A stretch of DNA of 64,000 nt from Heteronotia binoei (lineage: Eukaryota), in the NCBI RefSeq assembly GCF_032191835.1, contig NC_083226.1:61194001-61258000 (forward strand), written 5' to 3'. Position 1 is the stretch's first letter, and each line of letters begins with the position of its first letter. Position numbers and translations under genes: made by a program. Below the pieces are notes generated by a model, which worked only from the letters and a program-made list of their open reading frames with translations, ran no database searches and was not told where the DNA came from. Below, piece by piece: positions 34,601 to 40,600 of the stretch.

Positions 34601-37600
34601 CTGGTTAAGGCTCCGCAAAGCCCGTACCTCTTCTGGTAACTGATTCCACCAGTGGGGAGCTGTAATCAAGAAGGCCCTCTCCCTCGTAACTTTCAACTTG
34701 GCCTCCTTTGGCCCAGAGATTGTCAGCAGATTTTGCGAGCCAAATCTCAGCACTCTCTGGGGAATGTATGGGGAAAGATGGTCCCTAAGGTAGGCAGGTC
34801 CTTGGCCATATAGGGCTTTAAAGGTAATAACCAGCACCTTGTAACGAATCCAGTACACAATTGGCAGCTAGTGCAGTTCCCGTAACCTAGGCTATATATG
34901 CTCCCACTTAGGGAGTCCCAACAACAGTCTGGCTGCCGCGTTGTAATGTACTGGGAGACGAGTCGTGGTGGAAGCTTATTCTTTATTCGCTGGTACATTA
35001 CAGAACAGAACAGACGCGGCCGGGTCCGCTAATTTATACATGCATCCCGGAACATCCCCTTCGCTGGCCAGCCCAATCCTGGCCAGTTAAACTTCCCGCC
35101 CTTGGTCTGGATTGGCGGGGCTTTTCCCGCGCAGCGCACGGCGACCTGCGTGCGCCCTCAGGTCGCGCGGCGCTTGCGCTGAGTCCGATACTCTACACTC
35201 CTCCCCTCCTAGTTTAAACGACATAGTCCTTTAGGTACCCTGGTGTTCGGTGCTCCCGTGTTGATCTCCTCGGGGTTGCCGTCGGTGGGGGGCCCGATCC
35301 CGATGTGGGAGGCGCCGTTTCTGGCTGTTGCCCGCCCGCGTCGGGTACTGGCTCCGGTTCTGGTTCCGCGGCTCCGGGGGCATCATACGTTGGTAGCTCC
35401 TGTATTGGCGGCGCCTCTTCTGGCGGTACCGTGACCGGCGGTTCCCTGCTTTCTCCCTCTGCTGACTCCTCGGGTGGGGTGCGGCGGCGCAGCTGGTCGA
35501 TGTGCCGCCTCAGCACGTGGCCTCCGGCGGTGGTTACCTCGTAGGACCGGGAGCCTGTCACCCTCAAAACCCTTCCCGCTAACCACTCGGGGCCGCTTGA
35601 AAAGTTTTTCGCATATACTGGATCGCCCGGGAAGAACCCTCTCACTGCCTCCCTGACCTCGGGGGTCCCGCGGACCTCTGGCGCCCTGTCCGGGTGTAGC
35701 CTATCTAAACGAGTGGTCAGTTTCCTCCCCATGAGCAGTTCTGCGGGGCTGAAACCGGTTATGGGGTTTGGGGTGATCCTGTTGTGGAACAGGAAGGCTG
35801 AGAGGCGGTAGTCCCATTCCCCTTGTACTATACGGCCCAGGGCTTCCTTGGTGGTCCGCACCATCCTCTCCGCCTGGCCGTTGGTGGCTGGATGGAATGG
35901 GGCGGACCTTATGTGCCTTATAAGGTATCTGTCGGTGAACTCCCGGAATTCCCGGGAGGTGAATGCTGTGCCATTGTCCGTTACTAGTGTGTCGGGGATC
36001 CCGTGTGTGCAGAGGACCCTTCTGAGCGCCCGGACTGCTGCTGCGGTGGAGGTCGAGGCCACCGGGATTACCTCCAACCATTTCGTGTATGCGTCCACCA
36101 GTATAAAGAAGATCTGGCCCTGATGCGGCCCCGCGAAATCCACATGGAGGCGGGACCATGGCCGCCCGTTCGATTCCCACCTGTGGGTCGGGGCGGACGG
36201 CGGGTTGGGTCTGGACTCCTGGCATGGTTGGCACCTTCTTACCCACCCTTCTATTTCCTCATCCATGCCTGGCCACCACACGTAGCTCCGTGCCAGGGCT
36301 TTCATTCTCACGATGCCCGGGTGGGTCTCGTGGAGATCCTCCAATACCTGCCTGCGCAAGGGGGGGGGGACCACCACCCTGCTACCCCAGAGTATGCACC
36401 CCTTGTGTGTCGATAGCTCGTCCTTCCTGGACGCGAACGGCCGGAAGGCTTCTTCTGCTTTGCCCGAGGGCCACCCCCTTCCCACCCAGTCCCTGACCCG
36501 TGCGAGGACGCGGTCTCTCCCGGTCGCCCGAGCCACCTCGCTCGCGTGCAGGGGGCGCTCGGGGAGCGACTCTATGAGCATCACTCCGTGTGCCGGGGCG
36601 GGATCTGGGTCCGTCGCGGGTAGCGGGAGGCGGCTGAGGGCGTCTGCGTGACCCATAGCTTTACCGGGGCGGTGTATCAGCGTATACGTGTAAGAATTCA
36701 GGAACAGGTTCCACCTTAAAACCCTTTGAGACAGAATTTGGGGGGTCTGACGATCGGGGGCTAGGAGGCCGAGGAGCGGCTTGTGGTCAGTAGCGATGGT
36801 GAAGCGCCTACCGTAGAGGTAGTCGTTGAACTTATGCACCCCCGCCACGATCGCCAGGGCCTCCTTATCGATCTGGGCGTAGTTCCTCTCTGTCGGGGAC
36901 AGAGTCCTGGAGTAGTAAGCGATTGGCACCTCTCCCCCGCCCGGGAGTTGGTGCCCTAAGACCGCTCCTACTCCGTAGGGAGAGGCGTCGCAAGCCAGGA
37001 TCAGGGGTAAGTTTTCATCGTAGTGATGAAGTACCGCGTTAGAGACCAGGAGGTCTTTCACCGCCTGGAACGCCGCTGCTTGGCGTTTACCCCAGACCCA
37101 CGGGGCTTGTTTATCTAACAAACGGTGTAACGGCTCCGCCACGGCGGCCTTGTGGGGCAAGAATGCGTGGTAAAAGTTCAATAAACCTAAAAAACTCTGT
37201 AGTTCTGCTTTGCATTTGGGGGCAGGGGCTTGAACTATGGCCCTGGTCTTGTCTGCCGTTGGGTGAATTCCAGCCGCGTCCACGGCGAACCCCAGGAACT
37301 CCACCCGCGGAACTCCCAACAAACATTTCTCCTTTTTGACTTTCAGCCCCGCCGCTTGGAACCGTCTGAGGACCTCTCGCAGGCGGCAGCCGAACTCTCC
37401 ATCGGTGGGGGCGGCGATTAAAACGTCGTCAAAGAAGGGTTGAACTCCGGGGATCCCTTTGAGAAGAGAGTCCATTATGCTCTGGAATATCCCCGGAGCT
37501 ACGCTAACCCCGAACTGCAGCCGTTTAACCCTGAACGCACCCCTGTGGGTCACTATCGTCTGTGCCTCCGCTGTCTTAGCGTCGACCGGCAGTTGCTGGT

Positions 37601-40600
37601 ATGCTTGTGCTAAGTCCAGCTTCCCAAAAACCCTCGCCCCGGCTAGTGCTGCCAGGACATGGCTGACTACCGGGACTGGATAGGGGTTGTCTTGCAGTGC
37701 CTTATTTATCGTGCACTTGTAGTCAGCGCAGATCCTTACTTCCCCGTTGGGCTTGACCGGCGTTACTATGGGGGTCTCCCATTCTGCATACGTTACCGGC
37801 TCTAGGACGCCCTGGGCTGTGAGGCGGTCCAGCTCTGCCTCTATTTTTTGTTTGAGGGCGAACGGAACGCGCCTCGCTTTGAGCCTTATGGGCCTGACCA
37901 TAGGGTCGATCGGTAGGGTGATGGGCGGGCCCTTGTAGCTCCCCAAGGACCCGTCGAAAACCTCTGGGAACTCCCGGCAGACCCCGTCGAAATGGCTGGT
38001 CTGCACGTGGTCCACCCCCACCAGCTGGATCCCCAGTGGTTTGAACCAAGCCAACCCGAGGAGTGTGGTCAGTTGGCGCTTGACCACTAGGATGTCTAGG
38101 GGCCCCTTAAAACCCCCTCTTTCTACATGCACCCGGGCCCACCCCACGATGTGTACTGGGTTCTTCTGAAAGTCCCTCAGTACGAAGTCCACTGGCCTCG
38201 TTTGGAGGCGGCGGCTGGGACATAGTCTCTTGAGGGTTTCCTCCGAAATGATAGAGATGGAGGACCCCGAGTCTACTTCCATGATGCAGGGGGCGCCCTC
38301 GATTAGGACTGACATTTTGACCTTGTCTGGGGCCGAGAGGGGCAAGCTCAATACCTGCAGACTGGTGGATGCCGTCGTGTGTGTGTCCATGGAGTCGTGA
38401 TGCGCTGACGGTTGGCGGCGGCTGTTCTTGGCCCGGCAAGCCCGGGCGATGTGGCCTGTCTTCCCGCAGCTGCGGCAGTCCAGGTTTCGGTACGGGCAGT
38501 CCCTCCGCTCGTGGGGGTCGCCGCAGCTGGCGCACCGGGAACCGGTGGTGGCGGTGGCCCTCTCCGTCGCTCGTTGTCTCGCGGGGGCCCGTGTGTCCGC
38601 TCTTTGAGGCCGCCGGAGCTGGAACGCTTCTTCCTCTGCTCGGTCCTCCGGCTCCGTTTCTCCCTGGTGGACTGCCTCCCCACGTGGCTGGCCGTACGCC
38701 TTGGTGGCCCTTTCGAACGCCGTCGCCTCGTTGAAGGCTTGTTGTAGGGTGAGCTCCTCTTTTGCGAAGAGCTTCTGCTGCAGTCGCTCGTCCCGGAGGC
38801 CCCAGACAAATCGGTCCCTCAGGGCTTCGTCCCTCTTGTCGAAACTGCAGTTTCCGGCGATCTGCCGAAGGGCCGCCAGGTAGACCGCCGCTGTCTCCCC
38901 CGCCTTCTGGTCCCTCTTGTGGAAGAGGAACCGGCGGGCGACGATGGACGGTTGGGGCGAAAAGTGGCCCGTGAGGAGCCTCACGACCTCTCCGTAGGTC
39001 CTCTCGGTCAGCTTCGCCGGAGCGGAGAGACCGCGTGCGATCTCGAAAGTTTCTTCTCCACAGACGCTCAGCAGGACGTCTCTCTTTCGGTCGTCGTCGT
39101 CGATCAGGTTCGCCCGCAGATAGCACGCGACTCGTTCCGTATAGGTCTCCCATCTCTCGGGGTGCTCCGGGTTGAATTCTGCAAGATGGCCCGTCGTTAC
39201 ACTCGGGTTCGCCATGGTGGCGGCGGGCTGTGCGGTCCTGCGGTCCCCACCTTCCTCGTCTCCGGCCAGGTCTGGTTCCCCTCGGGCGGCCGGACCTAGC
39301 TAGATCCCATCCTCGTCGCCAGTGTAATGTACTGGGAGACGAGTCGTGGTGGAAGCTTATTCTTTATTCGCTGGTACATTACAGAACAGAACAGACGCGG
39401 CCGGGTCCGCTAATTTATACATGCATCCCGGAACATCCCCTTCGCTGGCCAGCCCAATCCTGGCCAGTTAAACTTCCCGCCCTTGGTCTGGATTGGCGGG
39501 GCTTTTCCCGCGCAGCGCACGGCGACCTGCGTGCGCCCTCAGGTCGCGCGGCGCTTGCGCTGAGTCCGATACTCTACACGCGTTCTGCACTAGCTACAGT
39601 TTCTGGGTTTGGCACAGGGGCAGCCCCATGTAGAGGGCATTGCAGTAGTCTAACCTCGAGGTGACTGTTGCATGGATCACTGTTGCCAGGTCATCACGCT
39701 CCAGGAAGGGAGCCAACTGCATCGCCCACCTGAGATGAAAAAAGGCAGATTTAGCAGTGGCTGCTATCTGGGCCTCCATTGATAAAGAAGGTTGCAGGCT
39801 CTTGACCCTGCGCTCTGTTTCCAGTGGCGCACCATTAAAAACCGGTAATGGGATTTCCCTTCCTAGGCCACCATGGCTTGGGCAAAGGACCTCTGTCTTT
39901 GCTGGATTCAACTTCAGCCTACTCAGCCTGAGCCAAGCTGCCATGGCTTATAATGCCAGGTCCAGATTTTCTGGGTCATCGTCAGACTGGCCATCCATCA
40001 ATAGATAGAGCTGGGTGTCATCAGCATACTGGTGGCAACCCAGCCCATACCTTCAGACAATCTGAGCAAGGGGGCGCATGTAGATGCTAAACAACATCAG
40101 GGAGAGAACCACCCCCTGAGGCACCCCACAATTAAGCGGGTGTCTCTGGGACAGTTCTCCCCCAATTGCCACCCTTTGTCCCCGACCCTCAAGGAAAGAG
40201 GAAAGCCATTGCAAGGCCAGCCCCTGAATCCCTGTGTCGGCGAGGCGGCGGGTCAGTAGCTGGTGGTCGACCATATTGAACGCAGCCGATAGGTCTAACA
40301 GCAACAGCACCGCCAAACCACCTCGATCCAGATGCCGCTGGAGATCATCCATCAGGGTGACCAGCATTGTCTCCGTCTCATGCCCCGGGCGGAAGCCGGA
40401 CTGGTGAGGATCTAGGACTGAAGTGTCATCCAGAAAACTCTGCAATTGTAACGCCACTGCCCTCTCAATAAGTTTGCCCCAAAATGGCAAGTTTGAGACC
40501 GGCTGGTAATGTGCCAATTTGGTCGCATCTGATGTAACCTTTTTCAGGAAGGGGAGAACCACAGCCTCTTTAAGAGGCGTTGGAAAAAGACCCTCCAAGA

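What the first reader, a model, noticed from the sequence alone, without database searches (positions are those of the whole stretch)
34937..39583. Apparently intact and very recent Mag-type Gypsy retrotransposon in intron 8
The LTRs are identical over 256 bp by eye, the TSD is perfect, the PBS and PPT are intact, and the 1333-aa ORF is uninterrupted. CpGs are abundant, in contrast to the CpG-poor flanks. Every other element in the window is decayed. This looks like a transposition-competent, possibly polymorphic copy. The tandem knuckles (CX2CX3HX4C then CX2CX4HX4C at 38436-38534), single ORF and short LTRs fit the Mag lineage.
Basis: partly seen in the sequence, partly recalled or inferred. 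Interest (0 to 1): 0.75.

Follow-up and report, generated by a model that had tools for sequence, protein, structure and literature searches.

The report
Young intact Mag-like Gypsy retrotransposon
A complete, very recently inserted copy of a Ty3/Gypsy "jumping gene" sits backwards inside an intron of a gecko CARM1-like gene; it is a clean example of a family still (or very lately) active in this lizard, but of a kind already known from squamate reptiles.

Summary
On the minus strand at 34942-39578 lies a 4,637-bp LTR retrotransposon. Its two 256-bp LTRs are identical and have TG...CA ends. It is flanked by a perfect 5-bp target duplication (CGCGT). It has an 18-nt primer site matching the 3' end of tRNA-Ser(GCT), a 13-nt polypurine tract, and one open 1,333-aa gag-pol frame. 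That frame carries two zinc knuckles, protease, RT, RNase H and integrase; there is no env and no chromodomain.

CpG observed/expected is 0.87 in the element and 0.18 in the rest of the window. The copy keeps all 156 highly conserved pol positions of 110 relatives. It departs at one of 46 conserved gag-protease positions.

It is nested in a broken LINE, in the intron between the CARM1-like exons at 32.26 kb and 42.14 kb, antisense to that gene.

Its nearest relatives are "K02A2.6-like" polyproteins of geckos (Heteronotia, 85%) and lacertids. Architecture and literature fit the Mag lineage, but no tree with Mag reference sequences could be built.

The LTRs bound the age at roughly 2-6 million years or less, under assumed rates. 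Polymorphism, expression and competence of this copy could not be tested: no DNA reads were offered. The scan had already noted at least six similar copies elsewhere in this genome. Verdict: real, young, ordinary in kind.

The parts
34937..34941 (.). Target-site duplication, left copy (CGCGT)
   Evidence: Identical to 39579-39583
34942..35197 (-). 3' LTR in element orientation, 256 bp, TG...CA ends. Its AATAAA at 34982-34987 is the presumed polyadenylation signal.
   Evidence: 256/256 identical to the other LTR; signals located
35198..35210 (-). Polypurine tract (AGGAGGGGAGGAG), directly abutting the 3' LTR
   Evidence: Read from the sequence
35214..39215 (-). Single gag-pol ORF, 1,333 aa, ATG in a GCCACCATGG context; the stop lies 3 nt before the PPT
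   Evidence: ORF list and translation; Pfam domains; best solved relative is Ty3 Gag-Pol 7q5b, E 4e-78
38436..38534 (-). Two nucleocapsid zinc knuckles (13 aa, 6-aa spacer, 14 aa)
   Evidence: Regex on the translation. The same layout is found in all 63 homologues that have two knuckles. Pfam zf-CCHC match is weak.
38265..38273 (-). Protease active site D-S-G (aa 315-317)
   Evidence: weak Pfam gag-asp_proteas match at aa 302-391
37284..37754 (-). Reverse transcriptase domain (aa 488-644); F-F-D-D box at 37425-37436
   Evidence: Pfam RVT_1, 4.4e-18; motif located
36690..37094 (-). RNase H domain (aa 708-842)
   Evidence: Pfam RT_RNaseH_2 6.9e-34 and RT_RNaseH 1.6e-31
35889..36371 (-). Integrase: H2C2 zinc domain (aa 949-1003) and catalytic core, with D at aa 1026, D at aa 1080 and E at aa 1116
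   Evidence: Pfam Integrase_H2C2 2.8e-18 and rve 2.5e-13; motifs located
39304..39321 (-). Primer-binding site, 18 nt, complementary to the 3' end (with CCA) of tRNA-Ser(GCT); one spacer base (39322) separates it from the LTR
   Evidence: The complement of the PBS, extended by the T-loop, is the 3' end of ARAGORN-called tRNA-Ser(gct) genes in about 29 of 40 metagenome loci.
39323..39578 (-). 5' LTR in element orientation: CCAAT (39492-39496), GC box (39477-39482), TATAAA (39414-39419), AATAAA (39363-39368)
39579..39583 (.). Target-site duplication, right copy (CGCGT)

Best explanation
This is one full-length autonomous Ty3/Gypsy (Metaviridae) LTR retrotransposon without env or chromodomain, most likely of the Mag lineage.

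It integrated recently, in minus orientation, into an older LINE fragment. That fragment lies in the intron of a CARM1-like gene between the exons at 32.26 kb and 42.14 kb, so the element is antisense to the gene.

Inferred life cycle:
1. The U3 promoter of the 5' LTR (CCAAT, GC box, TATA) drives a genomic RNA.
2. The RNA ends after the AATAAA in the 3' LTR.
3. The RNA is translated from a strong Kozak ATG into one Gag-Pol polyprotein, which its aspartic protease cuts.
4. tRNA-Ser(GCT) primes minus-strand DNA at the PBS, and the polypurine tract primes the plus strand.
5. The integrase joins the TG...CA ends to the target and makes the 5-bp duplication.

Shown here: all the sequence parts, their intactness, and the clean insertion. 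Inferred: the transcription start and poly(A) sites, that the family is active now, and that this particular copy can still move.
For: - LTRs are identical over 256/256 bp and the TSD is perfect.
- The PBS matches tRNA-Ser(GCT) 3' ends.
- The PPT abuts the LTR.
- One ORF runs gag knuckles, PR, RT, RNase H, IN in that order, with no other domain.
- The best solved relative is Ty3 Gag-Pol.
- All 156 pol columns that are at least 95% conserved in 110 homologues are kept.
- CpG o/e is 0.87, against 0.18 in the window and 0.5 in the LINE around it.
- Removing the element and one TSD copy rejoins the LINE reading 'LVQ|NAAARLL'.
- Contigs of paralogous LINE copies run straight across the site (joint 34936 to 39582, and the loose end at 34942).
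- The element falls in a gecko subclade with Heteronotia binoei (85%; SH-aLRT 100 and 99), inside a squamate clade.
- Published Mag elements are 4.5-5.3 kb, with LTRs of 140-300 bp, 1-2 ORFs, a Ser or Leu PBS and a 5-bp TSD (PMC3286476).
- Full-length Mag lineages are reported in squamates (PMC3670739).
- The K02A2.6-like label is linked to the Mag C-clade and Steamer-like elements (PMC8905726).
- A Steamer-like element has the same build (PMC11046912).
Against: - No tree with named Mag, SURL or Jule references could be made, so lineage membership is indirect.
- One gag position that is 90% conserved in relatives differs here (aa 128). Whether this matters, or is shared by the whole family, is unknown.
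- No DNA reads of this species were offered, so assembly quality at the LTRs and the allele state are untested.
- RNA contigs that match the interior are only 90-97% alike. They come from relatives, not from this copy.
Confidence: 0.85

Rival explanations
1. The copy is older than it looks. Its LTRs would be identical because of gene conversion between them, or because assembly or polishing collapsed two slightly different LTRs into one sequence.
For: With only 256 bp per LTR, zero differences bounds the age only loosely. No reads of the source individual could be laid.
Against: The 4-kb interior is also pristine. The ORF is open, all 156 conserved pol columns are kept, and CpG o/e is 0.84 inside against 0.18 outside. 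LTR homogenisation would not protect the interior. LTRs of 256 bp are easily spanned by single long reads.
Confidence: 0.05
2. The insertion is young, but this copy is itself dead or silenced. It looks intact, yet it would be unable to move, for example because of the unusual gag residue or because of host silencing. The family's activity would then rest on other copies.
For: One departure at a conserved gag position. No transcript at 99% or more was shown for the interior. Intronic antisense copies in methylating genomes are usually silenced (general knowledge).
Against: All catalytic motifs and all conserved pol columns are intact. The promoter, PBS, PPT and LTR ends are unblemished. The gag change could be family-wide and tolerated.
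Confidence: 0.25
3. It is a Ty3/Gypsy element of another lineage, or of an unnamed vertebrate lineage, that merely shares the compact Mag-like build.
For: Mag membership is defined by phylogeny, and that was not tested against references. The literature calls the Mag lineage the most polyphyletic one (PMC6238403).
Against: - The domain order rules out Gmr1.
- The lack of a chromodomain rules out chromoviruses.
- The lack of env rules out errantiviruses.
- The Ser PBS, 5-bp TSD, LTR length and total size match Mag rows and not the Mdg1, Mdg3 or Gypsy rows of PMC3286476.
- NCBI names every close relative after C. elegans K02A2.6, a label that PMC8905726 ties to the Mag C-clade.
Confidence: 0.2

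Closest known systems
Mag lineage of Ty3/Gypsy (mag of Bombyx, SURL of sea urchins, Jule of Xiphophorus; Mag-lineage elements of mosquitoes)
   Same: Compact size (4.6 kb, against 4.5-5.3 kb), short LTRs (256 bp, against 140-300 bp), one gag-pol ORF, tRNA-Ser primer site, 5-bp TSD, no env, no chromodomain (PMC3286476). Mag lineages with full-length copies are already reported in squamates (PMC3670739).
   Different: Host is a gecko. Pol identity to the invertebrate relatives found here is only 52-66%. Placement relative to the named reference elements was not tested.
Steamer and Steamer-like elements of bivalves (Mag C-clade)
   Same: Same build. MchSLE1 is 4,758 bp with 185-bp LTRs, a single 1,376-aa ORF, two zinc fingers, DSG, YxDD, DEDD, HHCC and DD35E (PMC11046912). 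Relatives of both carry the K02A2.6-like label (PMC8905726).
   Different: Different primer tRNA (Asn in MchSLE1). The RT box here reads FFDD. No link to neoplasia, and no direct sequence comparison was made here.
'K02A2.6-like' polyproteins of Heteronotia binoei, Gekko japonicus, Zootoca, Lacerta and Podarcis
   Same: 73-86% identical over RT, RNase H and IN; same Pfam domain set; they form one clade with the window's protein.
   Different: These are automatic gene models, often partial, and are not described as elements. None is 90% or more identical, so this gecko's own family is not in the protein collection.
Ty3 of Saccharomyces cerevisiae (solved Gag-Pol, RT and intasome structures)
   Same: Same superfamily and the same PR-RT-RH-IN order; the best match in the PDB (7q5b, E 4e-78; 4ol8, E 5e-60).
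   Different: Ty3 makes Gag and Gag-Pol by frameshifting, uses initiator tRNA-Met and targets Pol III genes (general knowledge). Here there is one continuous ORF, a tRNA-Ser primer and an insertion in a LINE.

Membership tests
Ty3/Gypsy (Metaviridae) LTR retrotransposon | Direct LTRs with TG...CA ends, flanked by a short target-site duplication | tested here: met
   256-bp identical LTRs beginning TGTA and ending TACA in element orientation; 5-bp TSD CGCGT
Ty3/Gypsy (Metaviridae) LTR retrotransposon | Pol domain order PR-RT-RNase H-IN | tested here: met
   Pfam hits in that order along the ORF; best PDB match is Ty3 Gag-Pol
Ty3/Gypsy (Metaviridae) LTR retrotransposon | tRNA primer-binding site next to the 5' LTR and polypurine tract next to the 3' LTR | tested here: met
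   18-nt PBS matching the tRNA-Ser(GCT) 3' end; 13-nt PPT abutting the LTR
Mag lineage | RT/RNase H/IN groups with mag, SURL and Jule reference elements in a phylogeny | not testable with these tools
   No reference sequences could be obtained by reference. The evidence is indirect: all close relatives are named K02A2.6-like, a label tied to the Mag C-clade in PMC8905726.
Mag lineage | Compact element (about 4.5-5.3 kb) with short LTRs (about 140-300 bp) and 1-2 ORFs | tested here: met
   4,637 bp, 256-bp LTRs, one ORF, compared with Table 1 of PMC3286476
Mag lineage | PBS complementary to tRNA-Ser or tRNA-Leu; 5-bp TSD | tested here: met
   tRNA-Ser(GCT); CGCGT duplication; PMC3286476
Mag lineage | No env gene and no chromodomain | tested here: met
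   Only one long ORF. Pfam finds nothing beyond gag knuckle, PR, RT, RH and IN. The C-terminal tail is Pro/Glu-rich with no domain hit.
Chromovirus | Chromodomain at the integrase C-terminus | tested here: not met
   No chromodomain hit at E <= 0.01
Gmr1-type Gypsy | Integrase encoded upstream of RT | tested here: not met
   IN lies at aa 949-1117, downstream of RT at aa 488-644
Errantivirus (gypsy sensu stricto) | Third ORF encoding an envelope protein | tested here: not met
   Only 16 nt separate the ORF's stop codon from the 3' LTR

The most novel reading that the evidence does not exclude
The family is transposing in the gecko germline now, so this insertion and its near-twins elsewhere in the genome would be polymorphic. 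That would give a living amniote model of Ty3/Gypsy (Mag) retrotransposition into genes. In addition, the lineage may have crossed between squamates and their parasites: a Rhipicephalus tick element sits inside the squamate clade, and an Ornithodoros tick element and a Trichinella element sit just outside it.
Probability: 0.4. Interest if true: 0.5.

Novelty: new member of a known kind. Interest (0 to 1): 0.3.

Why it matters
Mammals and birds have lost active Ty3/Gypsy elements, while squamates keep them. A zero-divergence, fully open copy inside a gene shows that this family was moving very recently in this gecko. Such a copy is useful as a population marker, as a possible source of insertional variation in genes, and as a reference copy for annotating the family. 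It does not change what is known about how such elements work.

Tried and rejected
- The look-up of sequencing runs gave only three metatranscriptome runs kept as contigs, and no DNA run.
- Laying those runs showed that the flanks are a very high-copy LINE. Interior contigs were only 90-97% alike, so the reads say nothing about polymorphism, assembly collapse or expression of this copy.
- The look-up by the words 'CARM1 paralogue intron exon' was blank.
- Bowen & McDonald 1999 could not be fetched.
- The supplements of PMC3670739 are not held.
- No named Mag, SURL or Jule protein appeared among the 120 listed homologues, so the reference phylogeny was not possible.
- The 'careful' IQ-TREE search did not finish in two 300-s runs. 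Only quick trees with SH-aLRT support are reported.
- No AU test was run on the position of the tick element.
- No tRNA gene lies in the window. The primer tRNA was therefore identified through metagenome loci instead.
- Chromovirus, Gmr1 and errantivirus were considered and rejected on tested features.
- Considered and rejected: a domesticated gag-pol gene, because LTRs, TSD, PBS and PPT are all present.
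Full report
**Observation.** The window holds two direct repeats at 34942-35198 and 39323-39579, 100% identical. An exact count gives 256/256 identical bases for 34942-35197 against 39323-39578. The 257th matching base is a coincidence between the first base after each LTR. In element orientation (minus strand) each LTR begins TGTA and ends TACA. The five bases outside each end are CGCGT (34937-34941 and 39579-39583). The LTR start occurs nowhere else in the window, with none expected by chance. A single ORF of 1,333 codons runs on the minus strand from 39215 to 35214.

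**Anatomy.** In element orientation the order is as follows.
- 5' LTR, 39578-39323. It carries CCAAT, a GC box, an inverted CCAAT, TATAAA at LTR positions 160-165 and AATAAA at 211-216. This predicts a short R of a few tens of bases; that is inferred, not measured.
- One spacer base.
- An 18-nt primer-binding site, 39321-39304.
- An 88-nt leader.
- An ATG in a GCCACCATGG context.
- The ORF.
- The stop codon, then 3 nt, then a 13-nt polypurine tract (35210-35198) that abuts the 3' LTR (35197-34942).

**Primer tRNA, tested without relying on memory.** The complement of the PBS without CCA, extended by the T-loop, was searched in metagenome contigs. In about 29 of the 40 loci scanned, the match is exactly the 3' end of a gene that ARAGORN calls tRNA-Ser with anticodon GCT. 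Examples are L001, L002 and L004.

**Coding capacity.** Pfam finds, in this order, a zinc knuckle, a weak gag-type aspartic protease, RVT_1, RT_RNaseH/RT_RNaseH_2, Integrase_H2C2 and rve, and nothing else.
- Motifs present: two knuckles (CX2CX3HX4C and CX2CX4HX4C, six residues apart), DSG, FFDD, and the integrase D, D and E.
- The best solved relative is Ty3 Gag-Pol (7q5b, E 4e-78).
- There is no env, no chromodomain and no second ORF.
- Against 110 homologues, every one of the 156 columns that are at least 95% conserved in aa 430-1200 is kept.
- In gag-protease, 45 of 46 columns that are at least 90% conserved are kept. The exception is aa 128, where this copy has R and the relatives shown have L or I. 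I only describe this difference. Whether it is private to this copy, shared by the family, or harmful is unknown.
- The 13 + 6 + 14 knuckle layout is shared by all 63 homologues that show two knuckles. It is a family trait.

**Age.** There are zero differences in 2 x 256 bp.
- Assuming 1e-9 substitutions per site per year (my assumption from general knowledge of squamate rates, not a tool result), the 95% upper bound is about 5.9 million years.
- Allowing a tenfold rate at the 24 CpGs per LTR, the bound is about 2.2 million years.
- The open 4-kb frame points the same way. So does CpG o/e: 0.87 in the element, against 0.18 for the window and 0.5 for the LINE it sits in.
- Earlier first-reader notes list at least six other 4.6-4.9-kb 'very young Mag-like' copies elsewhere in this genome. 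I could not test those notes. If they are right, they indicate a recent burst rather than a lone survivor.

**Context.**
- The flanks (39594-41852 and 34400-34941, minus strand) encode broken pieces of a LINE: RVT_1 at 4e-20 and a weak endonuclease hit.
- Taking out the element and one TSD copy in a script rejoins the LINE as 'LVQ|NAAARLL'. I recall that motif from the CR1/L2 ORF2 C-terminus; this is memory, not a test.
- Contigs of paralogous LINE copies in public RNA libraries run straight across the site (joint 34936 to 39582 with three letters between, and the loose end at 34942 that continues with the sequence found after 39584).
- On the plus strand, a CARM1-like arginine methyltransferase gene has exons at about 7.85, 11.75 (motif I), 20.69 (motif II), 22.8, 32.26, 42.14, 44.8 and 45.6 kb (THW loop).
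- The element therefore lies, antisense, in the 9.9-kb intron between the exons at 32.26 and 42.14 kb. 'Intron 8' is plausible but was not counted from exon 1.

**Relatives and lineage.**
- The closest proteins are K02A2.6-like models from the gecko Heteronotia binoei (84-86%), from lacertids (73-76%), from Gekko (73%) and from Eublepharis (68%). None reaches 90%.
- In quick ML trees, the window's protein pairs with Heteronotia (SH-aLRT 100 and 99), inside a gecko + lacertid clade (100 and 99), inside a squamate clade (100).
- The host being a gecko comes from earlier notes. The tree is consistent with that.
- Mag membership is defined by phylogeny (PMC6238403, PMC8220671), and I could not obtain named reference sequences.
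- Indirect support: the element matches the Mag rows of Table 1 in PMC3286476 (4.5-5.3 kb, LTR 140-300 bp, 1-2 ORFs, Ser or Leu PBS, 5-bp TSD). It does not match the Gypsy, Mdg1 or Mdg3 rows.
- PMC3670739 reports three Mag lineages with full-length copies in reptiles, including squamates.
- PMC8905726 ties the K02A2.6-like label to the Mag C-clade and Steamer-like elements.
- The Steamer-like element MchSLE1 has the same build (PMC11046912).

**Reads.** Only three metatranscriptome runs, kept as contigs, were offered. Interior contigs are 90-97% alike, so they come from related elements. The very deep coverage is on the LINE flanks. These data show neither expression of this copy, nor an empty allele, nor an assembly fault.

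**Verdict.** This is a real, textbook-complete, very young Ty3/Gypsy element, most likely of the Mag lineage. It is a new member of a kind already known in squamates. Competence and polymorphism are open.

Noticed in passing
P0013 (Rhipicephalus microplus), P0011 (Logan assembly), P0029 (Ornithodoros turicata), P0061 (Trichinella britovi); A cattle-tick element is 66% identical in pol, with 41 sequences in its cluster. It falls inside the otherwise squamate clade (clade support 100). A soft-tick element and a Trichinella element are the nearest outgroups, closer than the frog and fish elements. This pattern suggests old horizontal transfer between squamates and parasites. The position inside the clade has only moderate support (84-92), and no AU test was run.
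   Followed up: partly
window 7850-45630, + strand: Exons of a CARM1-like (PRMT4) gene. Motif I ([12 protein letters not shown]) is at 11747, motif II (SEPMG) at 20692 and the THWYQ loop at 45612. Further exons lie at about 7.85, 22.8, 32.26, 42.14 and 44.8 kb.
   Followed up: partly
window 39594-41852 and 34400-34941, - strand: A broken LINE (RT and APE-type endonuclease pieces, CR1/L2-like) hosts the insertion. Its CpG o/e of about 0.5 is well above the window's 0.18, so it is itself not very old. Its family is extremely abundant in the RNA-library contigs of a related or the same organism.
   Followed up: partly
window 34942-34951 with 34993-35002 (3' LTR) and 39323-39332 with 39374-39383 (5' LTR): The last 10 nt of the LTR (GTACATTACA in element orientation) are the exact inverted repeat of LTR positions 196-205. 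The two arms bracket the AATAAA signal and could form an R/U5 hairpin around the poly(A) signal. It was not folded or compared across copies.
   Followed up: no
window 38832-38834 (codon 128 of the ORF): Arg in this copy, at a gag position where about 90% of 61 homologues have Leu, within the conserved C-x-F...L-R-D-R-F-V-x-G-L motif. It is unknown whether this is private to the copy or family-wide.
   Followed up: partly
L005, L011, L026, L056, L062, L092 (metagenome loci): In 6 of 126 matches, the tRNA-Ser(GCT) 3'-end pattern is followed by CCA in the DNA. That is not expected of eukaryotic tRNA genes. These may be primer sites of other retroelements or retro-copied tRNAs.
   Followed up: no
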